A DNA stretch of 64,000 nucleotides from Perna viridis (Eukaryota). The notes under the pieces are model-generated. The model was not told the DNA's origin. It did not search any database and saw nothing but the letters and a program-made list of their open reading frames with translations. Every line of letters begins with the position of its first letter. Within the stretch, counting starts at the first letter, position 1. Where the stretch lies: contig CM074516.1 in assembly GCA_037379345.1 (NCBI GenBank), forward strand, positions 46,103,626 through 46,167,625. Reading direction: 5' to 3'. Shown piece by piece: positions 1,392-63,919 of the stretch. The position numbers and the translations under genes were made by a program.

Positions 1392-4300
1392 AGGATTGTA
1401 TTTCCATGGTTCTGGGAAATATTTCTCATTTCTGTGAGCCCAAAATGGTGACAGCATCAACATGTCTCCTTCAGGTATTTTCATATCCTGTAGAATAATA
1501 AGTAGTTAGACATACAAAATTCATAAAGCAGATTATATCATTAGCTACATCCTAAGAATATCTAAAATAAAAATGTATTTATTGTGCTGTGTAAAGTCCT
1601 CAAACACAACAAGAAATAAATCTAAATCATTTTCTGTAATACATGGAAAAACATATTTAATATGAAAGTGCTAGACATAAACATTTTTCCTGTTTTGCAA
1701 TGAATTGGAGAATAAAGAAAAAATGCAAAATACTTAAATGGTCCACAGGCATTTTAGCAAAAACATCAACAGGAGTCAAAATTACTATAAAATATTATGA
1801 GAATGAACAATTAAAGTAGTTATCACAATCACACCAAAATATGTACATAAAGAGTAACTAAAAAGCATTTCCATAAATGTAAAATTTGAATGAAAGGTCA
1901 ATTACACTAACCTATCCCATGGCCAATATGTAATAAACTTGTCCCAGGGTGCAATTAAAAATCTGCATATAGAGAGAGATGTACATTATAAAGTTCCAAT
2001 ATCTACAATCATTTTTGGAAAAGATCTAATAAGATGTCTAAACAGTAACAATCTGAATTTTGGATATTAAATGAATGTTAATAGATAGCTTAAGTGTAAT
2101 AAAGTAAAGATTATTTTACAATAAACTTCCTTAATTAATTAAAAAAAAAAACATTTAAAATAAATGTTGAACACTATATGTATGATCAGAAAAAGTAAGA
2201 GTTATGCAGCTATATAATGCCATAAAATAATAAAGTATGAAATTTTATTACAGGAAGTGGATACGACCAAATGTACTGGATACTAAACAACATGGGTGCA
2301 ACCTTTTGCAGTTGACAAACAAAAAATGTGTAACATACAAGAAATTCACCATAGCCTCTTACATGGTATTAAAAAATTGAGAGGAAACACTTATTTGCCC
2401 CTAACATATAATGCATACCCTTAGTTGGGACTGAGTTGCTAGCCCTGATAAAATGTCCCTCAAGGTCATTTCATCTAGCTAAATGGTTGTTTCCCTTGCC
2501 CTGGTTATCAATTTTCCAGATTGTTTTCCAAAAAGGTTTCACCCTAATTATTAGTATATCTATGGCTTTTTAGCCTAAATTATCTACTCTCACAGATTGT
2601 TTCATCCTAATTAATTTTTATTATTGGAATATTTTGGCTGTAGCTTTATTTTGGTAACATTTTTTGAAAGTGCCAAAATTAAACACACTACAGTAAAACA
2701 GATGGGGAAACTTAGAAACCTAATATAAATCAATGTATTGGTCACAATGGAGGTCAGTGATTTTTCATATTGTAATATGTAAGCAACAGACAACAGGTGT
2801 CCGACACAACAATTAAATTCATCCTTCATTTATCCAGGTAAACAATAAATCTGTTGCTAGTAGTATTAGATTTCTTTCTTGATGATGAAGGATTTTTTGC
2901 AAAAAATAAAACACTTATCATTCAGAGCCAAGCAAAATTAAACAGCAAAAATATTACACATGCATATTTTGAAAGAAAACCACAAATATATCCCAATTTA
3001 CAGTATATAATATGTATATTTCTGATTATCTATTCCCGACAGGTTGTTTCACCATGGGTTAATGTTCTACCAGCTTGTTTACCACTGATTATATATTTCC
3101 CAAAAAGGTGAATGGATATTAGGCTGGTCTGGGAATAGGGACAAAACAATCTCAAGTTGAATGGCATTGGGGCCAAACAACTTCATATATATATAGCAAA
3201 CTAAATTTTTGATCAAGACGCCCGATTCCCCAATATAAAAATTGAAAGTATATAGTACAAAAGAATCATTGCTTTTTATGAATCTGTTTAATTGACAATG
3301 TAAACCTGTTGACCCCTAATTAGAAAGAACTGGTAAACAAATACTGATCCCTCAAAACGATTGAACCTTCATTGACCCTTAACATATTCACTGTATGTTC
3401 ACTTGTGGGTTCTCACCCCATTAAAAGATTGTTTTTGAAAACAATTTTAACTACACATTCTTGCTTGAGAAACCTAGCTCACCCTCAATGTAAATGATTT
3501 GACAACGCGCCGAGTGATGATTCCAGTAGGCCGTAATCTCACAGCTTCTAAAACACACCATTTTAAATAGGGTAATCTTCTTAGGTCGTCTTCTTTAATG
3601 GTTTGTGAAATCCCTTCATGAAAGATAATGATTTCTAGAATGTTATTAAATATAAAAGCTTCAATCATGCAAAATATCATTGTTACAGTCATGTCTCCAT
3701 TGGACAGGACCATAACCCTTAGCTATCAAAGATAGAAAATATTACTGTTTTCAAATAGCTATGTATAAATGTGAATCCAGAATTATGAAAATGTGCTATA
3801 CCAAAATATGTCTCTATCAAACTTGTAGAACTTGTACTGAAGAATTAGTTTAAGTTATATATACAAATGTAACAATATTTTAACAAAAGGATGAGATAAA
3901 TTAATTTGTTTTACAAATTTAATCCCTTTTCTGCATTCACAAATGATCATTTCTCAAGTCCTATTGCCAAAAAATATGAGGTCAATCAGTTACTCATATA
4001 AAACTAATTACAATCATAAAAAAATTACTCTGACCTCAGACTTTTCTATTTGGCAAATAGAAAATTGAGTATGCACCCCTGTGATACATATAGCAAATGT
4101 TAAAATTGGTACTGGGTGTAAACTAACTTAAATCCATAGCAACCAACATGGCTTCTCATGGAAGACAAAGATTACCAAAGAAAACAGGGTATCCTCAGGT
4201 CATTGTGTCAATAAATACTTTAATGTGTATCAAATTTAGCTAAATAAACTCACATTTTCCCTCACATCAATAAATTAAGTATAAATGAAAAGAACAGACA

Positions 4301-7300
4301 AAAGGATTGATGTTTCAGTGACCCTTCTTATAATCACTCCTGGTGATCTCAATCTTATACTTTCCAAAATACAATATTTCAAATATCGGCACTTTTTCAA
4401 ATTTATTTCTGTTGTAGCCAAAGATGGACCTATGTAAAACAAAGAAAATACAATTCTTTCCTATATATGGAATAAAAAAATCAAACCATAAAAAAGGTAC
4501 ATTTGTATTAAAAATATTATATAAGATTGTGTTAGAAAAGACTTTAACAAGTGATCAAATTGAAGTAAATATTGTTGTATCAAGAACTTACTTCATTTAA
4601 ATTTTCAAAATATTTCCACCACTTATTTTTCAATTCTATCAATGATACTGTTATAATAGACTGAACAGATAACAGTACATGTAAACCACTTCTTACTAAC
4701 AAACATACATGTACATTTCACCCAAATTGAAAGAGGTGACACATTTAGGTGACTACAACATTCAACCCTGTTTTACTGAGTCCAGTTGTTCAAAACTTTA
4801 CCCGCCAGATAACTTTTTATCCAGTGGACAACTTGTATAGGTTGTACTGGACCTATCCAGTGGATAAATATTTTGAACATCTGGTCTTTTACAAAGCTAA
4901 CACTAACTTTAGACTGTAAGTAAGGAAACTGCTGCTCACACATTAAATATCAATTAAACATGAATTACTCTATCTTGAATCAAATTGTTACCTTCATATC
5001 TTATAATGAAGAATAAAGTTGATCATACTCATTTCTTAAAACTCACTAATTTGAGTAAGGACCAACTTAGTAACATACAATGATAAAATAATCATCAGTA
5101 CCCAATGTGTTATACACAAGAAAAGAAATCCAATTTATTATTTATGGCCACAAACTATTATATTTCACACTTGTTATAAAAGTTAAAAATGCATTCAATA
5201 ATAGTTCAACCTATTCTGTAATAATAAATATTTTGCCCACTTCATATCTTGATGAAACATGGTATGATTTAAATTTGGAATTATTTTGGAATTTAGAAAA
5301 CGAGGGAAAAAATAATTTGAAAAACTAACTCTTACTCAGAGGGTAAGTCATGCAGGCATGGCTAAGGGGTAAAGTTATTTGGATAATAGAAGGCAAAGAA
5401 AACTTGCTAACCCCCTTACATATGGTGGCAGGACTAACCCCTTAGTTGAGGCTAGTTTTACAAATTATTTTTTATTTGTTTTCCTAATGCCATAATAAGA
5501 CCTAATAATGGGAATCAATTAGAATTTAACTTTTGACCTTAGAAGCACTGAGAGCCTGATATCGGTCTGACAGGAAGTTAACTTGTAATGGCAAGGTAAT
5601 ATAAAGCAAGGATCTTTTTTAGTTTCGTATCTTAAACAACATAAAATGTTTATGGCTCAAATCTTAAAGTGTTGTTAAACTATGAAGAGTTGATTAAAAC
5701 TGTAAAAGACATTATTATGTATAAATATATCAATATATTTTACTTCGTCCTCTTACAGGTTACACATGCCTCATATTATACAACTATCAATTATTGAACA
5801 TTAAAGGACTCACATCATAGAAAACAAAATATCTGTGAGCAATAGGTCACAATTGATACTCCTGCTTGCACTCTGACATGATATCAGGAAAAAAGTGTTA
5901 CAGAAACATGGAAACGCAGACACATGGACAAGGATAAAACAGTATACCCTCCAATCCTTTGGAGCAGGATATAAAAATAGTACTCACAAAGAGTATAGAA
6001 TAACTAATAGCTACTAAGCATTCCAAATTGGAGGTGAAATTTAGTGCATTTCCTGATTAAGTGCTAAAAGGAAAACCAAAGTGAGAGCCAAATTAGCTAA
6101 AGCCCATACCAGGTTGTCCAAATACTTCAGTTAACTCTGCTCTCAGTTTTTTCAAGACCCTTTCATCATGCAGTATATAAGCTAAGGTCCAAAATGTAAT
6201 CTGTTTATCAAATAGAGTAACACACAATCAGATATTGAAAACATTTACAAACATTGCTTTTTTTTTATTTAAGTACAGCTCTGCCTAAAAACCTGGCAGA
6301 TGCTTATAAAGGGTGCTTCATGCATTTCTTTATACCAAATATTTTTTATTGCAAATCTTTCTGTAGGCCCCATAGAAACTGTATTTGCAAATATAAGTAG
6401 TCAACTGGAGATATTAACACTTAAATTTTAGTTATATTCTACTACAGAAAAAGTACAGGAAAACTTCCCACCAGAATTTCTACACTACAACCAGTGAAAA
6501 AATATTTCACAATAAGTAGCAGATCCAAGCACATGAACATATTAAGAGTTGTTTTCAGGACCTAACAAATGGATTTATACAGTTTCATTGATTATCTTAA
6601 GATATGATGAATCACCCCCTGCCTGGTTTTTAGGCAGAACCATACTTAACAGCTTTTTATGAGTGTATTCAAATCCAATAATACACACATTAGGGAAAAA
6701 TAAACTTTCCGTGAAAATCAAACTATTGTAACCAACAAAATTCTAGTGAATTTTGTAACACATAAGAACATGATAGCTGATATTTCAAAACAACAATTTA
6801 TATAGAAAATCTGTAATTAATTTAGTATGTTATTACATCTACTAACTGGTATATCATTAGCTAGTGAGGCCTAAAGTAACAACATCCGTAGTTCGTCTAC
6901 TTACAGGTATAGAATTAGCTAGAGAGGCCCAAAGTAACAACATCCGTAGTTCGTGAGGCCTAAAGTAACATCCGTAGATCGTGAGGCCTAAAGTAACAAC
7001 ATCCGTAGTTCGTCTACTTACTGGTATAGAATTAGCTAGTGGGGCCCAAAGTAACAACATCCGTAGTTCGTGAGGCCTAAAGTAACAACATCCGTAGTTC
7101 GTCTACTTACAGGTATAGTATTAGCTAGTGAGGCCCAAAGTAACAACATCCGTAGTTCGTGGGGCCCAAAGTAACAACATCCGTAGTTCGTGGGGCCTTA
7201 AGTAACAACATCCGTAATTCGTGGGGCCTAAAGTAACAACATCCGTAGTTCCTCTACTTACAGGTATAGAATTAGCTAGTGGGGCCTAAAGTAACAACAT

Positions 7301-10300
7301 CCGTAGTTCGTCTACTTACAGGTATAGAATTAGCTAGTGGGGCCTAAAGTAACAACATCTGTAGTTCGTGAGGCCTAAAGTAACAACATCCGTAGTTCGT
7401 CTACTTACAGGTATAGAATTAGCTAGTGGGGCCCAAAGTAACAACATCCGTAGTTCGTCTACTTACAGGTATAGCATTAGCTAGTGAGGCCTAAAGTAAC
7501 AACATCCGTAGTTCATGGGGCCCAAAGTAACAACATCCGTAGTTCGTCTACTTACAGGTATAGCATTAGCTAGTGGGGCCCAAAGTAACAACATCCGTAG
7601 TTCGTGAGGCCTAAAGTAACAACATCCGTAGTTCGTCTACTTACAGGTATAGAATTAGCTAGTGGGGCCCAAAGTAACAACATCCGTAGTTCGTGGGGCC
7701 CAAAGTAACAACATCCGTAGTTCGTCTACTTACAGGTATAGAATTAGCTAGTGAGGCCCAAAGTAACAACATCCGTAGTTCGTCTACTTACAGGTATAGT
7801 ATTAGCTAGTGAGGCCCAAAGTAACAACATCTGTAGTTCGTGGGGCCCAAAGTAACAACATCCGTAGTTCGTCTACTTACAGGTATAGCATTAGCTAGTG
7901 GGGCCCAAAGTAACAACATCCGTAGTTCGTGAGGCCTAAAGTAACAACATCCGTAGTTCCTCTACTTACAGGTATAGTATTAGCTAGTGAGGCCCAAAGT
8001 AACAACATCCGTAGTTCGTGAGGCCTAAAGTAACAACATCCGTAGTTCGTCTACTTACAGGTATAGAATTAGCTAGTGGGGCCCAAAGTAACAACATCCG
8101 TAGTTCGTGGGGCCCAAAGTAACAACATCCGTAGTTCGTCTACTTACAGGTATAGAATTAGCTAGTGAGGCCCAAAGTAACAACATCCGTAGTTCGTCTA
8201 CTTACAGGTATAGCATTAGCTAGTGAGGCCCAAAGTAACAACATCCGTAGTTCGTGGGGCCCAAAGTAACAACATCTGTAGTTCGTCTACATACAGGTAT
8301 AGCATTAGCTAGTGGGGCCCAAAGTAACAACATCCGTAGTTCGTGAGGCCTAAAGTAACAACATCCGTAGTTCGTCTACTTACAGGTATAGAATTAGCTA
8401 GTGAGGCCCAAAGTAACAACATCCGTAGTTCGTGAGGCCTAAAGTAACAACATCCGTAGTTCATCTACTTACAGGTATAGAATTAGCTAGTGGGGCCCAA
8501 AGTAACAACATCCGTAGTTCGTCTACTTACAGGTATAGAATTAGCTAGTGGGGCCCAAAGTAACAACATCCGTAGTTCGTCTACTTACAGGTATAGAATT
8601 GGCTAGTGGGGCCTAAAGTAACAACATCCGTAGTTCGTGAGGCCTAAAGTAACAACATCCGTAGTTCGTCTACTTACAGGTATAGCATTAGCTAGTGGGG
8701 CCTAAAGTAACAACATCCGTAGTTCGTGGGGCCCAAAGTAACAACATCCGTAGTTCGTGGGGCCCAAAGTAACAACATCCGTAGTTCGTCTACTTACAGG
8801 TATAGCATTAGCTAGTGAGGCCCAAAGTAACAACATCCGTAGTTCGTGAGGCCTAAAGTAACAACATCCGTAGTTCGTGAGGCCTAAAGTAACAACATCC
8901 GTAGTTCGTGGGGCCCAAAGTAACAACATCCGTAGTTCGTCTACTTACAGGTATAGCATTAGCTAGTGGGGCCCAAAGTAACAACATCCGTAGTTCCTGA
9001 GGCCTAAAGTAACAACATCCGTAGTTCGTCTACTTACAGGTATAGCATTAGCTAGTGGGGCCCAAAGTAACAACATCCGTAGTTCGTGAGGCCTAAAGTA
9101 ACAACATCCATAGTTCGTCTATTTACAGATATAGAATTAGCTAGTGGGGCCTAAAGTAACAACATCCGTAGTTCGTGAGGCCTAAAGTAACAACATCCGT
9201 AGTTCGTCTACTTACAGGTATAGAATTAGCTAGTGGGGCCCAAAGTAACAACATCCGTAGTTCGTCTACTTACAGGTATAGAATTAGCTAGTGGGGCCCA
9301 AAGTAACAACATCCATAGTTCGTCTACTTACAGGTATAGAATTAGCTAGTGGGGCCTAAAGTAACAACATCTGTAGTTCGTGAGGCCTAAAGTAACAACA
9401 TCCGTAGTTCGTGGGGCCCAAAGTAACAACATCCGTAGTTCGTCTACTTACAGGTATAGCATTAGCTAGTGGGGCCTAAAGTAACAACATCCGTAGTTCC
9501 TGAGGCCTAAAGTAACAACATCCGTAGTTCGTCTACTTACAGGTATAGCATTAGCTAGTGAGGCCCAAAGTAACAACATCCGTAGTTCCTGAGGCCTAAA
9601 GTAACAACATCCGTAGTTCGTCTACTTACAGGTATAGCATTAGCTAGTGAGGCCTAAAGTAACAACATCCGTAGTTCATGGGGCCCAAAGTAACAACATC
9701 CGTAGTTCGTCTACTTACAGGTATAGCATTAGCTAGTGGGGCCCAAAGTAACAACATCCGTAGTTCGTGAGGCCTAAAGTAACAACATCCGTAGTTCGTC
9801 TACTTACAGATATAGAATTAGCTAGTGGGGCCTAAAGTAACAACATCCGTAGTTCGTGAGGCCTAAAGTAACAACATCCGTAGTTTGTCTACTTACAGGT
9901 ATAGAATTAGCTAGTGGGGCCCAAAGTAACAACATCCGTAGTTCGTCTACTTACAGGTATAGCATTAGCTAGTGGGGCCCAAAGTAACAACATCCGTAGT
10001 TCATGGGGCCCAAAGTAACAACATCCGTAGTTCATCTACTTACAGATATAGAATTAGCTAGTGAGGCCCAAAGTAACAACATCCGTAGTTCATGGGGCCC
10101 AAAGTAACAACATCCGTAGTTCATCTACTTACAGATATAGAATTAGCTAGTGAGGCCCAAAGTAACAACATCCGTAGTTCGTCTACTTACAGGTATAGAA
10201 TTAGCTAGTGAGGCCCAAAGTAACAACATCCGTAGTTCGTGAGGCCTAAAGTAACAACATCCGTAGTTCGTCTACTTACAGGTATAGCATTAGCTAGTGA

Positions 10301-13300
10301 GGCCCAAAGTAACAACATCCGTAGTTCGTGGGGCCTGAAGTAACAACATCCGTAGTTCGTCTACTTACAGATATAGAATTAGCTAGTGGGGCCTAAAGTA
10401 ACAACATCCGTAGTTCGTGAGGCCTAAAGTAACAACATCCGTAGTTCGTCTACTTACAGGTATAGAATTAGCTAGTGAGGCCCAAAGTAACAACATCCGT
10501 AGTTCGTCTACTTACAGGTATAGAATTAGCTAGTGGGGCCCAAAGTAACAACATCCATAGTTCGTCTACTTACAGGTATAGAATTAGCTAGTGGGGCCTA
10601 AAGTAACAACATCCGTAGTTCATGGGGCCCAAAGTAACAACATCCGTAGTTCGTCTACTTACAGGTATAGCATTAGCTAGTGGGGCCCAAAGTAACAACA
10701 TCCGTAGTTCGTGAGGCCTAAAGTAACAACATCCGTAGTTCGTCTACTTACAGGTATAGAATTAGCTAGTGGGGCCTAAAGTAACAACATCCGTAGTTCG
10801 TGAGGCCTAAAGTAACAACATCCGTAGTTCGTCTACTTACAGGTATAGAATTAGCTAGTGGGGCCTAAAGTAACAACATCCGTAGTTCGTGAGGCCTAAA
10901 GTAACAACATCCGTAGTTCGTCTACTTACAGGTATAGCATTAGCTAGTGAGGCCCAAAGTAACAACATCCGTAGTTCGTGGGGCCCAAAGTAACAACATC
11001 CGTAGTTCGTCTACTTACAGGTATAGCATTAGCTAGTGGGGCCTAAAGTAACAACATCCGTAGTTCGTGGGGCCCAAAGTAACAACATCCATAGTTCGTC
11101 TATTTACAGATATAGAATTAGCTAGTGAGGCCCAAAGTAACAACATCCGTAGTTCCTCTACTTACAGGTATAGTATTAGCTAGTGAGGCCCAAAGTAACA
11201 ACATCTGTAGTTCGTGAGGCCCAAAGTAACAACATCCGTAGTTCGTCTACTTACAGGTATAGCATTAGCTAGTGGGGCCTAAAGTAACAACATCCGTAGT
11301 TCATGGGGCCCAAAGTAACAACATCCGTAGTTCGTCTACTTACAGGTATAGCATTAGCTAGTGGGGCCCAAAGTAACAACATCCGTAGTTCATGGGGCCC
11401 AAAGTAACAACATCTGTAGTTCGTCTACTTACAGGTATAGCATTAGCTAGTGGGGCCCAAAGTAACAACATCCATAGTTCGTCTATTTACAGATATAGAA
11501 TTAGCTAGTGAGGCCCAAAGTAACAACATCCGTAGTTCCTCTACTTACAGGTATAGTATTAGCTAGTGAGGCCCAAAGTAACAACATCTGTAGTTCGTGA
11601 GGCCCAAAGTAACAACATCCGTAGTTCGTCTACTTACAGGTATAGCATTAGCTAGTGGGGCCTAAAGTAACAACATCCGTAGTTCCTGAGGCCCAAAGTA
11701 ACAACATCTGTAGTTCGTCTACTTACAGGTATAGCATTAGCTAGTGAGGCCCAAAGTAACAACAAACTGTAGTTTGGTTTGTAATCATCCTGTACCAACT
11801 GTAACAGGGTCTGCAGTAATGTCTATGAAAAACATGGGTTAATTGGGTTTAGTTCTCAGGCTATAAATCACAATGTTGTATGGATTTTAGGTTTTATATT
11901 TTTACTGGTGTTTTATGTAGCATGTGTAGCTTTTAAAAGAGAGAGGGGGTACATTACTTTTGAAATTGAGAGGCCTGTATTCTATATGCTTACAATATAG
12001 AATCAATTAGTGAGCAATATGAATAAAATTAACACACTACAGAAATATAGAGATGAAGATGAAGTACTTGATATTTACATAGTAGTATTGAAAGTTTCAC
12101 TACAACAGCAGAATAGCACTGAGACTATTACCTGTGGTATCAGGATATCTGCTCAAGGAGACTAGATAGTAGCAACACACCTCCTCTTTAAGGACATTTT
12201 GTTTCAATTTCATAGGCTTTTAAATCTAATTTTTATTTTAATGCAAATGCATCCTAAACCTTTTTAACATTTTAGAATAGATGAGTTGTCTATATATTGT
12301 ACTTCAACTTATTTAAAAACAAAAACAAAAAAAACACTAAATGCAAATTACACAGGTTTTAGTAGTACTGTTAATGTATCTGTACTGTTTTAATTATACC
12401 AGAATTACAGACTTCAATTTACATTTTAAATGTAATTGAGACTTGAATTGATTCTACTCTTTTCTAAACTATTCCAATGTTATATTCAAAACCCAACCTC
12501 TTCCTCATCCCTGGCTTTAGTTCCTTGTAACTTCTGTACCACACCACCAAACAAAGTCAGCAGGTACTTCTTGGCTGTACACCAGTCCCTGAAAAAAAAT
12601 CTTAACTTTGATCTAGGTTTTATATTTCAGGAATTGGATATCTTTAAAAGTGACCAAACATTTGCACTTTAGTATTTATTTTCATTATGGCTGTTACAAG
12701 GATAACTAAAAAATTCTAGTGAATCAATATCAGATTGTTGATTTATACAATTGTGTGCATTTTATTATTTTTTTTACTTACTTTAGAAAGAACGGGGGTA
12801 ACCTTGCCCCATACTCAAAGTGATCATCAAATATGACAAACATCTTCTCTAGTTTCTCAAATTCCTTCTGTAACAGACATTAACAAATCTTCTAATTCTT
12901 GTAAACAACACTTTGTTGATAGATGGTTACAATCCTATAGGCTTTATGACTGTGGTTACAATCCTATAGGCTTTAGGACTATGGTTACAATCCTATAGGC
13001 TTTAGGTCTGTGGTTACAATCCTATAGGCTTTATGACTGTGGTTACAATCCTAAAGACTTTACGACTATGGTTACAATCCTATAAGCTTTAGGTCTGTGG
13101 TTACAATCCTATAGGCTTTATGACTGTGACCACAATCCTATAGGCTTTATGACTGCAGTTTCAATCCTATAGGCTTTAGGTCCGTGTTTACAATCCTATA
13201 GGCTTTATGACTGTGACCACAATCCTATAGGCTTTATGACTGCAGTTTCAATCCTATAGGCTTTAGGTCCGTGTTTACAATCCTATAGGCTTTATGACAG

Positions 13301-16300
13301 TGACCACAACCCTATAGGCTTTATGACTGTGACCACAATCCTATAGGCTTTATGACTGTGGTTAAAGGTGACAATTAACCATACACAATTGGCTTCGTAA
13401 CAAAGTTTATATGTAGTTGTATGTACTAGCTCACTTACCTACAGTTAATGTAGGCCATATACACCTTAACAAGTTATCAAACCAATATTGGATTAGGCAA
13501 GAACTCCAGGAAAATGCAAGGCTGTGCCAAACATTTTTTCCAGTTTGAGCCAAAATTGTATATCTATATCATGTTTTTTTTTATCAAGTCAATGTTTCAT
13601 TGTTGACTTTATACTGCAAAAATAATTTCAAAAGAAAGGATTATTGACAAGAAAAATCCAATTAAGTCCTGGAGCAGGTTACAACTTGGTAACTTTAAAA
13701 CACTTTCACATTTGTGACACCAAAATAACTATATATCATATGTTTAATAATACTATAATGCATTTTGACTGCTCAAATAGAAGACTGAAGTATAAAAAAT
13801 AGCCTTATACCACAGAAATACTCAATACAATACAATGCTGACAATTTTACCTCATTATCAACAGGTAGCATATCCTTTCCAAACAGATTGTTCATCACAG
13901 ATGCATACATTGTCTTTCTGACCAACAAAAGAAGATCACTGCTTCCTGTAAAAAGACAAACAAAAAAACTACATTAAACAGCAATTACTAGGGAACTAAT
14001 TCCTTTTAAAATTCCAATATGGTCATCTTTTCTATTCATAACAGAGGAGTAAATGAATGAGAAGTTATATTGCTCACCTAGAAACAACAAACAAACTTTT
14101 CTTGACAGTTCAAAGGCAAAAGTTCTTTCATGGAGATTTGTACATTATTCAGCAATTAATGACATTCAAAAGTATTCAGAAATGAAGGAAATTATACGAT
14201 TAAAAAAACAAAAACAAATTGTTAAATTTCACCTTCTGTGGAATCTATACTCAAGAACTTTATATCAAGTTTAACCTTACATGTTGTTCTATACCTTGTC
14301 ATAAGAATAATTTTATTAACTAAAAGTTCCTTAATATAAATTAATACAGTTTTCAAGATACTAGTATAAGCAACTTGAAGTTGCATGTGTTGTTGTGCTA
14401 GGTATATCCCCACTAGTAAAGGAAGTTGAGAATGTAGAGAAACCAAAATCACATAGAACATATGCCCTATCTATATGATGTAACACACTAAATTTTAAAT
14501 CAATCTATTTATTGTGAGTCAAATTTTTAGTGATGAACATTTCCTCTATCATTCCATACAGTGAAAAGTGGCTAAGTCCCATGAAACAGGAATTTGATAT
14601 CCGACAGCACCTAAAATGGCTGACAATGTTTGCCCCATCTATATGAAGTTAAATGCCAGATTTGAAATTAAACCATCAGTTGGGAACCAGGAAAGTTGCT
14701 ACAAATGATAGATGGACAAAGTGATTCCAATGTACCACCCATTCATTTAGTGGGAGTATAAAACAAAGGAATCAATAGAAGAAACTGTACAAATTCATCC
14801 CTATAAAGACTTCCCTAGGTGTTGACAGTCATTCTATTGATTGAAAGTTCCTTCCTTAAACAACAAAAAGTACCAACTAATGACCTGACAGATAGAAGTC
14901 AATTTTCAGTTTCCACAAGGTCCTTGTGTTTAATAAGATGTATTTTGAAGTTGTTTTCTACGAAATTTTAGAAAAATGAAATAAAATAAAATCCTGTCCT
15001 ACCAACCCTTTTTTTCTGACTTGTAACAGGAAACAGAGGTATAATTTTATTTCGTGTTATATATCCCAAGAATGCTAGTAACATTTGTAATGTACTGACT
15101 GGTTTCAGAGAAGAAAATTCTTAGGCAAAAGTAAACATGTCTGAAGACGATGAATGCAAAGTGATGGCAATATCACCCTTATAAATCTTTGGTCCAGGTG
15201 GGCTCTTTATGTGCTGCTGATTGTATTTAAAGAAGATAAAACATTATCAGTACTTTTACTCTCGATCAATGGCACATGCATAGTATTAAATTAACAAATT
15301 TTAATCCTATGTTGGTGCTATACTTTCTACAAGAAACTTATTGTCTTTCAACTGTTTTTTTTTCAATTTCCCTTAATGCTACCCAATGTGAATGTCAAAT
15401 CTTACATTTTTGCAAATAAAAAAAGAGCAGCAGGTATCTAAAGTTTCAGGATAGTACCTTGAGGGCCAAGTTTTGCCAGCTGATCATTAAACTCCTGACA
15501 AAGCCCATCACAAAAATAAACTAATCTGGAAGAAGCCAATCTCCCCTTCACTAAGTCATGTATCTTGGTATGATAGGTAAAAAAGGAAGTTTTGCTGACA
15601 GAGGCTGCAATAAAAAAACATTGATGGTTATAAATGTATTTCTTCTCAACATTGTATGTATTTCCTATTCTTATGTGTTTATAACAGAATAAAAATAAAA
15701 ACAGCAAACATTTTTTCATCAATGATCATATGCAGTTATGCAGTGCTATATTTTCATCATTCTGCTATGTAAGCACTGGATGAAACTCAATGTCCATGTT
15801 TCATATCGAAAAATAAAAACATAATTAAACTTTGTTTTCAGTGATTTTCATTGAGATCATGATTCACCCAATTTTGGCATAAGACAATTAAAGTTCCTAG
15901 AGAGCACTGTACACAGAATACTTCAAGAAATTAATTTGGGGTAAATTAAAATCCAATACTAACATTGAAAGTGCTGATTGATATTTATGGTAATAGCTTT
16001 AAAAAGCAGGTGATATTTCTAATAAAGGGAACTGATCAAATGATCATTCAAACCTTATTTTTTTTTTTAGTGTATGAAAATAAACCTACCGACATTTAAA
16101 ACAGGATCTTGCACTGCTTTTTGAAAGTCCACAAAGGGTGACTGGAAAAAATAGTGGAAATCTTCCGCCTCTGTTATAAATGTTAAACGTTCACCAGCTA
16201 CATACAAGGTAAATATAGGTCCAAGCTGTAATTAAAACTACAAATTATTATATTTTTTTTCGAACAAAATTGTGTTGTCTATGAAAACAAATGTATTAAA

Positions 16301-19300
16301 CATTAAAGGTAAACAATATTACAATATATACTTAAAGACCCTATGTTTCTTATACAATTTAATAACCCATTCCATACCAAGCCTTCCCAAAATAGGAATG
16401 TTTGATACATATGTACTGAGAAAATTATAACAACCTATACAATAATATTTATGTATATGACCTGTACAATAACCACAATTCAGTTTGATTTCCAGTCAAT
16501 TACTGTACAGCAGAAGTTTTTTTCATAATTTTTATCCTTTTTATTTATACTACTGATATAACTGTGCTGTAATCCTTGATTATACATAGTATTATCTGAG
16601 CTTTTTTAATTATTTTATTTTAAAAGATTTACAATAAACATAGACCTGTATTCAAAATAGCAAGAAATCAAAATCCTGCTTTATCACATGCTCGAGAGTG
16701 GATTTGATTATATCAGATTTGTAAATAAAGAGTAATTACTTTTAACAACAGGGACTTTATCATACATCCTCTGAATTTATGAAATACTGGTGACATTAAG
16801 TAAAACTCTGAACTTCACATCATTAATTTCTTTCATAGTTAAAAAAAGTTTTTTGCACAGAAGTGCAAGACATGGCTGTGTTAAGTTGCCACAAAAGGAT
16901 AAATTGATAATACCCCAATGATCAGGGCATAAAAATATAACTCCAGTTGGTGTAAAACACTTCATTTTCTATTTTCCTACCTTCCGGCACCAAGTTTAAG
17001 CACAATAATTCAGTTTTCTTAGGGAACTTCAAATTTATTTTCATGAATGTATAAAGGATGCCATTTTTTACAATTTATTTGTAACAACCATTTGATTAAA
17101 TGTGGACTGCAAACCCTTTGTTTTCTATTTTCAAGCTTGTATGCAACATTATGGCAAGCCAAAGTGGACAAAAATAAGTGTTTTCTAATACTAAAAAATG
17201 AATTTTTAATATTACCAATTCATTTTTTAATATCACAAATTGAATTTCTAATATTACAAAACCCTTTTTAAATATTAAAAAAATCATTTTATATATTAAA
17301 AATTCAATTGAATTTCTAATATGAAAAAATGATTTTTTAATATTAGAAATTGATTTTCTAATATTAAAAATGGATTTGTTGTATTCAATTACGATTTTTT
17401 AATATCAGAAAATCATTTTGTAATATCAAAAAATGTGACTGATTTTGCAATATTGCAAAATGATTTTCTAATATTACAAATTCATTTCCAATATTACACA
17501 TTCAATTTGTAATACATGTATTACTAAATCAGGAATTTGTAATATTAAAAAATGAAATTTTAATATTACAAAATGAATTTCTAATATTAAAAAAATATTT
17601 TCTAACATTGAAAAAAATGATTTTGTAATATTAAAAAATGATTTTCTAATATTACAAAATATTGATTTTTGTCCACTTTGGCTTACCATACAACATTTTA
17701 AAACATTTTCCTTGAAAGGTTTTAAAGTTTTATGATACAAAAGTTAACTTTTTTTTTATTTGTTCTAACACATTTACATAAATGGTCATAACACAAATAA
17801 TAGAAACAAAGTATGTAATTTCTGACACCAACAACAAAGAAAAAAGAAAGATATAAAGTTTGATTAAACGTAGGAAGTTGCACAGTGGTGACTCAACTGT
17901 GAAAAAAAAGTAAATAGACATCATAGAAAGAGTGCTTGTAAAAAATTACAGTATAATTTGGGGTTTAAAATTAATTATTTTGAAAACCGAGTATCTTAAC
18001 ATCTCATAATCTCAACAATTTAAAATTAGGGGTCTTGACATTTACTGATATATTCAATGAAAGCCATTTTTATAGCGACATTTCTCTATTGCTAGAGAGT
18101 GGACACATTCCATATTTACAAATTGTTGACCTATCAGGCGTGTATCTACAGACATCAACATAGGAAGGCCTTTGGTTTTGTCTATAGATAGTTTTATAGA
18201 AAGATAATTTATTGCTTTCACCTAAACTACTATTTTGGTTTTGTAAGGTTTGACCATGGAGTCTTTGTTTGATAATAGATAAGATATTTTTCATATTGCT
18301 ATTATTATCAATTAAGTAGCCAAAACCAAGTTTCTTTATCCATAATTTAATTGTTGTTATCCATTTATTTGAATCTGGGATATTTGTATATATTTTGTTT
18401 ACCAAAGTATTCGCTGAATTGGAGATATATCCTCAAAATTTTATTGTTAGTATTTTTACTTTCTGTTGTAAAGGGTGTCTATTAAGCTCAGTTAAGCATG
18501 CAACATTTGTTGCTTTACTATGTATTCCTAAAATTTCTTTAATAAATTTGATATGTAAGTGTTCAAATGGGTCAGTATCATTAAGATTGCAATATGCACC
18601 CCAAACTTCACATCCATATAATGTAATTGGACTTACAAGTCAAATAGTTTTTTCAATAAACCACTAGCATTATTAAGTCTCATGGTTTTCTTATTTTAAA
18701 CCAGGCTTTGCGACCCTTTTCCATTCATAGTTTTGTGGACACATTTATATTACAGTTGTATTTAAAAGTTATTCCAAGATAGCAGTATGTTTTTACAGTT
18801 TCAATATAGGTATTATTGATTTTAAAACTGTTTAAATGGGTTTTCCCATTTGAATTGAAGACCATAATTTAAGACTTTTGTTCGTTTGCATCTAGTTTCC
18901 ATGATGAACAATTTTTTTCTAATACATCTAGAGATTTTTGTAGACCACTTTCGGTGTTTAACAGTAAAATAATATCGTCTGCATACAAAAGAAAATTAAT
19001 AGTAAGATCACCCAGAACAACTGGATCAGTCTGAGATTCATTTAGATTTGTAACAAGATCATTAATGTATAGATTAAATAAAATGGGTTTAAGAACATCC
19101 CCTTGTTTTACTCCACATTTTGATACAAATGTTCTACCTAGGCCTTGTTTAAACTTGATTTTTCAACTAGGGTCTCTCTATACATAGAATATAACATATT
19201 AAAAATTTGGGCAGGGAATTTATTTTTACAAAGTTTATAAAATAAACCTTCTCACCATACTGTGTCGAAAGCCTTTCTTAGATCTATAAATGCTGCAAAA

Positions 19301-20038
19301 ACTTTCTTTTTCTTTGTTTTATATGCATCGATTATTAACTTGATTGTTAAGATGTGGTCAGTAGTTCTGCACTTTTCTTTAAATCCGATTTGATTTTCGC
19401 ATATGAGATCATTATTATTTATGAATTGAATGATAAATGGACATATGACACATGTCCCTTCACTATATATGGAAATGAATATTTTCCCTTTTTAAATTTT
19501 CAATAAGATGCAATGAACAAGAACATCCATAAATACGTTTATTTATCATTATTTTATAACTTAAAATCATACACATTTTATACATACATGTAATTTGATA
19601 GTTTCAAAGAATATTGATTATTATTATTATGCAGCTCAAACTTGTGAAAATACTTTGGGATTATAGTTATGTCTAAACTTAAAAAAAAACCAATTGGTTT
19701 TAGTATACAAATCATATTTTTAATTATGTTATCTTCCATAGCCATATACTATTGATAATTTTGTGCTAATTCAATATTGTATTTTACCTGAGTACCATGT
19801 ATACTGTATTTTAATGCATATGTATAATTTATAGACTTTGTACCTTTCGTTTCTGAGCGATGTAATTTAAAGGGCTCTTCCCAAAATCAATTGCACAGCC
19901 CAACCATGGAATCCAGCCTTTACAAAGCGGTGGAAGGGGTTTAGATTTTTTCCGTTTCGCTTGGTAAAAGCAAAACAAAAGGGGAATGACCAAAGTTAAA
20001 AGCAGACCAAAAAATACTGGTGGTAGTTCAACTATCAT
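1392..20038 (-). CDS. CYP39A1: CYP39A1-like cytochrome P450 (24-hydroxycholesterol 7-alpha-hydroxylase-like, CYP7/8/39 group); multi-exon, 3' end including the heme-binding Cys lies left of the window
   Basis: Minus-strand exons with phase-compatible GT-AG boundaries: 20038-19844 (MIVELPP..TM helix..PPLCKGWIPWLGCAIDFGKSPL), 16225-16090 (LGPIFTLYVAGERLTFIT..VDFQKAVQ), 15604-15458, 13945-13851, 12867-12782 (FDDHFEYGARLP), 12588-12498, 11822-11727 (I-helix, NYSLLLLWASLANAIP), 6200-6110 (ITFWTLAYIL), 3613-3483 (LPYLKWCVLEAVRLRP, ExxR motif), 1487-1392 (IPEGDMLMLSPFWAHRNEKYFPEP). These motifs match my recollection of vertebrate CYP39A1. Confidence 0.88.
4782..4884. mobile_element. Short MITE (possibly Harbinger-like)
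   Basis: Terminal inverted repeats ccagttgttcaaaa ... ttttgaacatctgg; internal repeated tatccagtgga. Confidence 0.5.
5822..5977 (+). mobile_element. Internally deleted copy of the HINE/pearl-like family at 520-1168
   Basis: 5' end atctgtgagcaataggtcacaattgatactcctgc; 3' end ggacaaggataaaacagtataccctccaatcctttggagcaggatataaaaa (hairpin). Confidence 0.45.
6840..11764 (-). repeat. Two-unit minisatellite (31-bp and 58-bp units) derived from the P450 exon 3' end and its splice donor
   Basis: Plus-strand core g(a/g)ggcc(c/t)aaagtaacaacatccgtagttcgt (31 bp), with or without the 27-bp extension ctacttacaggtatag(a/c/t)attagctagt. Manual count is about 58 long and about 49 short units. On the minus strand the long unit reads TTGTTACTTT(G/A)GGCC(T/C)CACTAGCTAAT(G/T/A)CTATACCT GTAAGTAGACGAACTACGGATG. 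Confidence 0.97.
11727..11822 (-). CDS. CYP39A1: CYP39A1-like I-helix exon (96 nt, phase 0/0); its last ~37 nt form the first unit of the adjacent tandem array
   Basis: tttttcatag|ACA TTA CTG CAG...CTT TGG GCC TCA CTA GCT AAT GCT ATA CCT|gtaagtagac translates as TLLQTLLQLVQDDYKPNYSLLLLWASLANAIP and joins in frame to ITFWTLAY at 6200. Confidence 0.9.
12923..13364. repeat. 29-bp minisatellite, about 15 copies, in a P450 intron
   Basis: Unit ggttacaatcctataggctttatgactgt with a central palindrome cctatagg; variants of the unit recur. Confidence 0.95.
17150..17690. mobile_element. Non-autonomous TIR DNA transposon with 6-bp TSD (IS3EU-like termini)
   Basis: TIR tatggcaagccaaagtggacaaaaat ... 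atttttgtccactttggcttaccata (1 mismatch in 26); flanking direct repeat caacat at 17144-17149 and 17691-17696; interior of ~21-22 bp AT-rich subrepeats. Confidence 0.8.
18060..19440 (-). mobile_element. Degenerate non-LTR retrotransposon (LINE) reverse transcriptase fragment in P450 intron 1
   Basis: Minus-strand motifs NQIGFKEKCRTTDHILTIK, AAFIDLRKAFDTV, CGVKQGDVLKPI, INFLLYADDIILL and a YCYLG-type segment; interrupted by frameshifts and stops. Confidence 0.88.

Positions 20039-44405: not shown

Positions 44406-63919
<19,514 letters not shown>

What the first reader, a model, noticed from the sequence alone, without database searches (positions are those of the whole stretch)
6840..11764. A 4.9-kb satellite built from a P450 exon's own 3' end and splice donor, giving about 57 tandem decoy donors
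Seen: the array starts inside the coding I-helix exon. Its long unit is the last ~37 nt of that exon (LLLWASLANAIP), the donor GTAAGT and about 15 further intronic nt. Most copies keep CCT|GTAAGT exactly like the true donor at 11727/11726, and the array fills about 89% of the 5.5-kb intron. Reading through from the real exon towards the first decoy donor hits TAG (..YGCCYFRPH*), so extending the exon to any distal donor gives a premature stop. Inference: either exon definition reliably picks the first donor among dozens of identical ones, or the array acts as a copy-number-dependent dial on P450 output (U1 snRNP loading, unproductive splicing and NMD, intron retention). I do not know of a described example of this size.
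Basis: partly seen in the sequence, partly recalled or inferred. Interest (0 to 1): 0.88.

Follow-up and report, generated by a model that had tools for sequence, protein, structure and literature searches.

The report
Intron minisatellite repeating a splice donor
An intron of a mussel-like bivalve's CYP39A1-like P450 gene holds a 4.9-kb tandem repeat copied from the exon end and its splice donor, a large example of a kind of minisatellite already described in human genes (F7, IFI6, CBS, LMNB2, PDGF) and probably a tolerated by-product, not a regulator.

Summary
On the minus strand, 6836-11773 is one tandem array of 108 units. There are 59 long units of 58 nt, the first being the real exon end plus donor, 48 short units of 31 nt without a donor, and one 28-nt unit. 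It carries 53 decoy GTAAGT sites, 48 of them with the same CCTGTAAGT as the true donor at 11726. It fills 88.5% of a 5,526-nt intron. Any read-through hits TAG at 11654-11652.

The gene is an intact 13-exon CYP39A1-like P450, closest to Mytilus. The same intron, at the same position, is 742 bp in Mytilus californianus and 817 bp in Babylonia, with no array. The array is therefore lineage-specific. It occurs nowhere else in the 723-Mb genome.

The kind is not new. Borensztajn et al. 2006 describe such minisatellites in F7, IFI6, CBS, LMNB2 and PDGF, with only the most upstream donor or donors used.

Earlier scan notes flagged similar arrays elsewhere in this genome. I confirmed two next door. 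About half of 20 sampled donor arrays genome-wide also start at coding exons.

Decoy donors are no better conserved than the rest of the unit, and CpG sites are decaying.

Best reading: a young, near-neutral VNTR. RNA and read evidence could not be obtained.

The parts
11727..11822 (-). Exon 7 (I-helix exon, 32 codons, TLLQ...LLLWASLANAIP) of the CYP39A1-like P450 gene. Its last 47-48 nt are the first copy of the repeat unit.
   Evidence: Translation. Matches residues about 250-281 of the Mytilus californianus orthologue, which reads ..NYSLLLLWASLANAIP|ITFWTLA...
11721..11726 (-). Genuine 5' splice site GTAAGT (context CCT|GTAAGTAGACG).
   Evidence: Sequence and motif positions. It is the only donor that gives the conserved ..AIP|ITFW.. 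junction.
6836..11773 (-). Minisatellite of 108 units: 59 long of 58 nt (exon end + donor + 11 intron nt), 48 short of 31 nt (long unit minus 27 nt including the donor), and one of 28 nt. 37 distinct unit sequences. Higher-order periods 89, 325, 414 and 178.
   Evidence: Unique to this locus in the genome.
11632..11637 (-). First decoy donor GTAAGT, 89 nt downstream of the true one. 52 more intact copies follow, down to 6904.
11652..11654 (-). First in-frame stop (TAG) met when the exon is read through the true donor. It lies upstream of every decoy donor.
6201..6835 (-). Unique 635-nt tail of the intron, with polypyrimidine tract and acceptor. Together with the first 11 nt this is about the size of the orthologous introns.
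   Evidence: Orthologous introns are 742 and 817 bp.
6108..6200 (-). Exon 8 (ITFWTLAYILHDERVLKKLRAELTEVFGQPG).
   Evidence: tblastn to Mytilus P0164 gives 81% identity. Weak Pfam p450 match.

Best explanation
This is a young, lineage-specific intronic minisatellite (VNTR).

Origin. A 58-59-bp piece spanning the exon 7/intron 7 junction of a CYP39A1-like P450 gene was duplicated in tandem. It was then amplified by slippage and unequal exchange of multi-unit blocks. A 27-nt internal deletion produced a donor-less 31-nt variant that now alternates with the long unit, giving the 89-nt dimer. The intron grew from roughly 650 nt to 5.5 kb.

Effect. The array is tolerated because splicing takes the first donor after the exon. 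This is the 5'-to-3' 'most upstream site' rule shown for human F7 IVS7, helped by exon definition. All 53 decoys therefore leave with the lariat. Rare use of a decoy as an alternative donor gives a premature stop and probably decay of the transcript.

What is shown and what is inferred. Shown: the anatomy, unit origin, uniqueness in the genome, absence from orthologues, lack of special constraint on the decoy donors, and many similar arrays on unrelated genes. Inferred: which donor is used, and neutrality.
For: Array anatomy and origin from the exon.

Unique to this locus in the 723-Mb assembly.

Gene intact. 13 exons match the Mytilus CYP39A1-like protein at 52-89% per exon, including the heme motif FGSGRYQCPGR.

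Same intron position in M. californianus (742 bp) and Babylonia (817 bp) without any array.

No extra constraint on decoy donors. 3 of 6 donor positions vary, against 14 of 34 other positions. 5 of 58 long decoy units have lost GTAAGT.

Mutation pattern of neutral young DNA. Variant cells are 7.8% at CpG sites against 1.0% elsewhere. CpG o/e is 0.78 in the array against 0.21 in the flanks. Long units have 95.3% mean pairwise identity, with no gradient away from the exon.

No unusual RNA structure (z = +0.71) and no Rfam family.

Same architecture in the neighbouring gene: 50 nt x 5 and 39 nt x 16.6. About 10 of 20 sampled arrays genome-wide have it too, 5 of them with Pfam-supported exons ending at the first donor.

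Published precedent with experiments: PMC1557585.
Against: There is no transcript or read evidence.

The decoys have a perfect intronic match to U1 (GTAAGTA). In F7, sites with full consensus could compete, so some decoy use is plausible.

16 units carry a good acceptor-like TTGTTACTTTAG followed by 24 in-frame nt and a strong donor. This could give aberrant in-frame products.

Three donor-spanning arrays among about 14 arrays in 94 kb is more than my rough random-placement estimate predicts. This region was flagged because of them.
Confidence: 0.65

Rival explanations
1. Copy-number-dependent regulator. The 53 strong U1-binding sites load U1 snRNP on the nascent intron. This tunes P450 output either through unproductive splicing and NMD or intron retention, or positively through U1 effects on elongation and premature termination.
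For: 53 intact GTAAGT sites, 48 with the true donor's 9-mer. Any simple decoy use gives a stop. Tandem-repeat length is associated with splicing variation at many human loci (PMC10078293).
Against: Donor positions are not more conserved than the rest of the unit, and CpG decay is ongoing. Orthologues work without the array. The same architecture is scattered over unrelated genes, including ankyrin, cathepsin, ZIP and ILEI genes, as expected of a mutational by-product. In F7 the identical pseudo-sites do not compete.
Confidence: 0.15
2. Assembly artefact. The array is real in kind, but its length or unit order is mis-assembled, or the locus is collapsed or expanded.
For: No reads could be laid. 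Tandem arrays are where assemblies err. No predicted protein in public collections matches the array's open frames, although that blank means little.
Against: There are 37 distinct unit sequences interspersed in a non-trivial order, and no exact internal repeat of 250 nt or more. The assembly is chromosome-scale, with 46 contigs for 723 Mb. Similar arrays occur at many loci and in another mollusc assembly.
Confidence: 0.07
3. Generator of protein variation. Array units serve as in-frame microexons (24 or 39 nt) or as gene-conversion donors for the I-helix end (WASLANAIP variants).
For: 16 units give TTGTTACTTTAG|24 nt|GTAAGT encoding APLANSIP, APLANAIP and similar without a stop. Three stop-free 39-nt AG..GT cassettes encode MLLLWASLANTIP.
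Against: An 8- or 13-residue insertion in the conserved I-helix would most likely cripple a P450; this rests on general knowledge of the fold. The exon copy keeps the orthologous sequence exactly. The unit variants look like neutral polymorphisms.
Confidence: 0.05

Closest known systems
Human F7 intron 7 37-bp VNTR (Borensztajn et al. 2006, PMC1557585)
   Same: It is a minisatellite whose first monomer spans the exon-intron boundary, so the authentic donor is followed by identical pseudo-donors in the intron. The array is intronic and the gene is functional.
   Different: F7 has 5-9 copies of 37 bp, with only 4 exon nt in the unit and a weak donor (UGG/gugggu). Here there are 108 units (58 long decoy units, 53 with an intact donor), 47-48 exon nt per unit, a strong GTAAGT donor, two unit lengths and 4.9 kb in total. 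Donor choice is shown by experiment for F7 and only inferred here.
Human IFI6 (6-16) intron 2, CBS intron 13, LMNB2 and PDGF intron 4 minisatellites, as listed in PMC1557585
   Same: The splice donor is reiterated by a junction-spanning minisatellite of 10-25 or more copies with monomers up to 100 bp. In LMNB2 only the authentic donor is used, with a similar situation reported for PDGF. In IFI6 and CBS the two nearest pseudo-sites are also used.
   Different: Those arrays are smaller, at most about 25 pseudo-sites and 1-1.5 kb. In IFI6 the proximal pseudo-sites are used constitutively. Here any simple decoy use is out of frame with a stop.
Intron gain or sliding by tandem duplication of an AGGT-containing exon segment (e.g. 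PMC2891723)
   Same: The founding mutation is a tandem duplication spanning splice-site sequence.
   Different: No new intron is created here. The intron position is old and shared with Mytilus and a gastropod, and the duplication merely lengthens the intron.

Membership tests
Minisatellite whose first monomer spans an exon-intron boundary (F7 / IFI6 / CBS / LMNB2 / PDGF type) | Head-to-tail tandem array of monomers of about 10-100 bp | tested here: met
   TRF periods 58 and 89. 108 units of 58, 31 or 28 nt.
Minisatellite whose first monomer spans an exon-intron boundary (F7 / IFI6 / CBS / LMNB2 / PDGF type) | The first monomer contains the real exon end and the authentic donor | tested here: met
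   The first unit is the exon's own 47-48 nt plus GTAAGTAGACG. The exon sequence is conserved in orthologues.
Minisatellite whose first monomer spans an exon-intron boundary (F7 / IFI6 / CBS / LMNB2 / PDGF type) | The donor sequence is reiterated identically in the downstream intron | tested here: met
   53 decoy GTAAGT sites, 48 with the identical CCTGTAAGTA.
Minisatellite whose first monomer spans an exon-intron boundary (F7 / IFI6 / CBS / LMNB2 / PDGF type) | Only the most upstream donor or donors are used in mRNA | not testable with these tools
No same-species transcript or protein was found.
Minisatellite whose first monomer spans an exon-intron boundary (F7 / IFI6 / CBS / LMNB2 / PDGF type) | Copy number polymorphic among individuals (VNTR) | not testable with these tools
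   Only one assembly was available.
CYP39A1-like (clan 7) cytochrome P450 gene | Exons collinear with CYP39A1-like proteins, including the I-helix, K-helix ExxR motif and heme-binding FxxGxRxCxG motif | tested here: met
   Pfam p450 matches on three exons. Exon 1 is nearest CYP7A1, CYP8A1 and CYP51 structures. Best relatives are named 24-hydroxycholesterol 7-alpha-hydroxylase-like or CYP39A1. 13 exons align to Mytilus P0164, and FGSGRYQCPGR is present.
Recursive splice sites | An acceptor AG directly abutting the regenerated donor (YAG|GTAAGT) | tested here: not met
   Units read CCT|GTAAGT (49), TCT|GT (7) and CCA|GT (2). None has AG at positions -2 and -1.
Dispersed satellite or transposon-borne repeat | Copies at several genomic loci | tested here: not met
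   All 30 matches in the 723-Mb assembly lie inside this one array.
Tandem array of alternative (mutually exclusive) exons | Each unit is a whole exon with its own acceptor, donor and preserved frame | tested here: not met
   The unit holds only the last 47-48 nt of a 96-nt exon. Unit lengths 58, 31 and 89 are not multiples of three. Read-through meets a stop.

The most novel reading that the evidence does not exclude
Exon-end-plus-donor minisatellites may be a systematic feature of this bivalve genome, and perhaps of molluscs generally. They would number in the hundreds and arise preferentially at splice junctions through a transcription- or splicing-coupled duplication process. Large arrays like this one would then measurably tune host-gene output through U1 loading or unproductive splicing.
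Probability: 0.1. Interest if true: 0.75.

Novelty: new member of a known kind. Interest (0 to 1): 0.38.

Why it matters
With 53 intact decoys behind one true donor, this is to my knowledge a much larger natural test of 5' splice-site choice than the human cases listed in PMC1557585, which have 4-25 pseudo-sites. That comparison rests on the paper's list and my own knowledge, not on a full survey.

The genome seems to hold many such arrays on ordinary genes, including ankyrin, cathepsin, ZIP transporter and ILEI genes. One RNA-seq data set from this species could therefore test the 'most upstream donor wins' rule across dozens of independent loci and unit designs. If the first donor is used cleanly everywhere, these arrays are neutral VNTRs and handy polymorphic markers. 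If not, they are a source of regulated or deleterious mis-splicing.

For annotation, such arrays are a trap. Gene predictors may pick a decoy donor or call pseudo-microexons.

Tried and rejected

Same-species transcript or protein.
- The representative search with exon 1 and two homologue searches found orthologues only. The best were Mytilus at 68-72% identity.
- A search with an 80-aa open frame from the array found nothing.

Structured RNA. The fold z-score was +0.71 and Rfam gave no match. Rejected.

Dispersed repeat or transposon origin. Rejected, because the unit is unique to this locus.

Recursive splicing. Rejected, because there is no AG before the donors.

Selection on decoy donors. 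The per-position profile shows none. Positions 1-18 served as the parsing anchor and cannot be judged.

Unbiased estimate of minisatellite density. The density of about 150 arrays per Mb rests on 94 kb around the window.

Other arrays in the window. Those at 12924-13364 and 58201-59695 were inspected and are not exon-derived.

Literature. A search for a genome-wide description in bivalves found nothing relevant.

Joined coding sequence. All exon evidence is exon by exon, by reference.
Full report
**What is there**

The window is G000:C6:46103626-46167625 of a 723-Mb, 46-contig assembly. Tandem Repeats Finder reports a single array at 6838-11764 with nested periods of 58, 89, 178, 236 and 325. 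GC rises from about 0.30 to 0.42-0.44 across it.

The gene lies on the minus strand. Exon 7 (11822-11727) reads TLLQTLLQLVQDDYKPNYSLLLLWASLANAIP and ends at CCT|GTAAGTAGACG. The next exon starts at 6200 with ITFWTLAYILHDERVLKKLRAELTEVFGQPG.

I parsed the array with an 18-nt anchor, which gives 108 units:
- 59 units of 58 nt, the first being the real exon end and donor
- 48 units of 31 nt
- one unit of 28 nt

The short unit is the long one minus 27 nt, including the donor.

GTAAGT occurs 54 times on the gene strand in the array, against 16 times in the other 59 kb. 49 copies have CCTGTAAGT.

The intron is 5,526 nt. 4,891 nt (88.5%) are array, followed by 635 nt of unique sequence. Reading through the true donor meets TAG at 11654-11652, before the first decoy at 11637.

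**Unit origin**

The unit matches the exon over 39 contiguous nt (TGTTGTTAC...ATACCT). With a 1-nt indel it also matches the preceding AACTAC.G.

The last unit ends with a degenerate donor (CCAGTTAGTAGATG) directly before unique intron sequence. The founding segment was therefore most simply 47-48 exon nt plus 11 intron nt.

**The gene**

Exons were examined one by one, by reference. I did not build or search a joined coding sequence.
- Pfam p450 matches three exons.
- Exon 1 is nearest CYP7A1, prostacyclin synthase, CYP51 and CYP8B1 structures.
- A representative search with exon 1 led to full-length relatives. Their sources name them 24-hydroxycholesterol 7-alpha-hydroxylase-like or CYP39A1.
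- The closest are Mytilus californianus and M. coruscus, at 68-72% identity over the exons. The host is therefore a bivalve related to mussels.
- Thirteen exons align in order, including the heme motif FGSGRYQCPGR in the 10 kb beyond the window start. The gene looks intact.

**Comparison with orthologues**

The intron sits at exactly the same place (..ANAIP|ITFWTLA..) in M. californianus and in the gastropod Babylonia areolata. There it is 742 and 817 bp long, with no repeat.

The intron is therefore old and the array is a lineage-specific addition. It enlarged an intron of roughly 650 nt about 8.5-fold.

The unit occurs nowhere else in the assembly, so it is not a dispersed satellite or transposon cargo.

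**State of the array**
- There are 37 distinct unit sequences, interspersed, with no exact internal repeat of 250 nt or more. The best self-similarity lags are 89, 325, 414 and 178 nt. This is the look of a real minisatellite evolving by block exchange.
- Long units are 95.3% identical on average, and similarity to the exon copy shows no gradient along the array.
- Variation is concentrated at a few polymorphic sites (positions 14, 19 and 31) and at CpG sites. Variant cells are 7.8% at CpG positions against 1.0% elsewhere. CpG o/e is 0.78 in the array against 0.21 in the flanks. This points to young DNA undergoing ordinary CpG decay.
- The donor hexamer is not specially protected. 3 of its 6 positions vary, against 14 of 34 other positions. 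Five of the 58 long decoy units have lost GTAAGT.
- The RNA shows no unusual folding (z = +0.71) and no Rfam family matches.

**Known precedent**

Borensztajn et al. [quoted passage not shown] Their examples:

| Gene | Array | Donor use |
|---|---|---|
| F7 intron 7 | 5-9 x 37 bp | Only the most upstream donor |
| IFI6 / 6-16 | 25 pseudo-sites | Authentic donor plus the two nearest pseudo-sites |
| CBS intron 13 | 15-20 repeats | Authentic donor plus two pseudo-sites |
| LMNB2 | 10-15 x 100 bp | Only the authentic donor |
| PDGF intron 4 | 16-18 x 81 bp | Reported as similar to LMNB2 |

[quoted passage not shown] Only pseudo-sites with a full consensus match begin to compete.

The kind is not new, although this example is several times larger than those listed.

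**A genome-wide class**

Earlier notes of this scan flagged similar 'echo' arrays in other genes of this genome. I tested this in several ways.
- Neighbouring gene. Two arrays in the next gene on the plus strand begin in an open frame that runs into the first donor and then repeat exon end plus donor. One is 50 nt x 5 (L009:7688-7940) and the other 39 nt x 16.6 (L010:870-1517). The frames were checked by translation and have no Pfam match.
- Pattern count. Three AGGTAAGT motifs spaced 12-42 nt apart occur 219 times in the genome, against 119 for the built-in reversed control.
- Sample of 20 such loci. About 10 start at an open frame ending at the first donor. Five of ten such frames match Pfam domains right up to the donor: ILEI, ankyrin, papain-family protease, ZIP transporter and, weakly, thioredoxin-like.
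- Another mollusc. Babylonia's orthologous gene has a 62-nt x 10 array (L012:23878-24502). It runs 14 nt past the start of the tblastn match to the next exon (24489), and its unit carries an acceptor-like TTTTTTTTACAG. It appears to span the acceptor and exon start; I did not read the sequence itself.

A rough neutral estimate is my own inference. It uses assumed values of about 200,000 donors and 40-nt founder units. With about 150 arrays per Mb locally, roughly 1% of arrays would span a donor by chance, or on the order of 1,000 genome-wide. That is compatible with the two-fold excess over the control and with about half of the sampled arrays being exon-derived. Random birth of minisatellites plus tolerance of donor-spanning ones is therefore enough. 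A junction-targeted mechanism is not required, but it is not excluded.

**Mechanism proposed**

The steps are: a tandem duplication across the junction; expansion by slippage and unequal exchange; a 27-nt deletion variant forming the 89-nt dimer; and splicing from the first donor to 6200, which removes all decoys.

Simple decoy use adds an out-of-frame segment carrying a stop. One complication is that 16 units have TTGTTACTTTAG followed by 24 in-frame, stop-free nt and GTAAGT, and three units form stop-free 39-nt AG..GT cassettes. In-frame aberrant products are therefore conceivable.

**What could not be done**

There is no RNA evidence for donor choice and no read support for the array's length. 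No same-species transcript or protein turned up.

**Verdict**

This is a real-looking and well-described array, and a large new member of a known kind. It is most likely near-neutral. Its main value is as part of a set of natural experiments on 5' splice-site choice.

Noticed in passing
window 4311-4412 and 3501-3638 (minus strand): There are two copies of the K-helix (ExxR) exon in series. Both align to the same residues (about 318-351) of the Mytilus orthologue. The downstream copy is closer (LPYLKWCVLEAVRLRPTGIITRRVVKSF) and the upstream one more diverged (CRYLKYCILESIRLRSPGVIIRRVTET). This may be a mutually exclusive exon pair or a decaying duplicate.
   Followed up: partly
window 18073-19491 (minus strand, intron 1 of the P450 gene): Frame-broken reverse-transcriptase fragments (Pfam RVT_1, E = 1e-15 and 6e-6) of a retroelement lie in the same orientation as the gene.
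   Followed up: partly
L009:7688-7940 and L010:870-1517 (7.7 and 10.9 kb beyond the window end, plus strand): Two more exon-end-plus-donor arrays sit in the neighbouring gene. One is 50 nt x 5 (..CCTGCTAG|GTGTAAGT) and the other 39 nt x 16.6 (..AACACTAGG|GTAGGT, a frame-preserving unit length).
   Followed up: yes
L014, L018, L019, L023, L030 (sampled loci on contigs C1-C3): Donor-repeating minisatellites start at exons of ILEI/FAM3-like, thioredoxin-like (weak match), ankyrin-repeat, papain-family protease and ZIP transporter genes. The protease array has at least 25 perfect AGGTAAGT copies with a 46-nt period.
   Followed up: partly
L012:23878-24502 (Babylonia areolata orthologue): A 62-nt x 10 array ends 14 nt inside the tblastn match to the next exon (start 24489), and its unit carries an acceptor-like TTTTTTTTACAG. 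Junction-spanning arrays therefore seem to occur at acceptors too, and in a gastropod. The sequence itself was not read.
   Followed up: partly
window 12924-13364 (minus strand): A 29-nt x 15 minisatellite ends 55 nt upstream of the acceptor of the next P450 exon (about 12870), in the branch-point region. It is not derived from the exon.
   Followed up: partly
window 58201-59695: A 26/27-nt x 55 array shows extreme GC skew (-0.49). On the minus strand its units read ..CTAG|GTAGRG.., which is donor-like, but no exon abuts it.
   Followed up: partly
window 7285-11661 (16 sites, minus strand): The G-to-A variant at unit position 14 creates TTGTTACTTTAG. This is followed by 24 in-frame, stop-free nt (APLANSIP, APLANAIP, ASLANAIP) and GTAAGT, forming pseudo-microexons. 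Three stop-free 39-nt cassettes start at 11587, 11204 and 7830.
   Followed up: partly
window 6836-11773 versus flanks: The array is a CpG-rich block (o/e 0.78, 182 CpG sites) inside a strongly CpG-depleted gene body (o/e 0.21).
   Followed up: no
L012:1-7707 and L013:1-2307: An Oscp1-family gene lies next to the CYP39A1-like gene in both Babylonia and Mytilus. I did not check whether this holds in the window.
   Followed up: no
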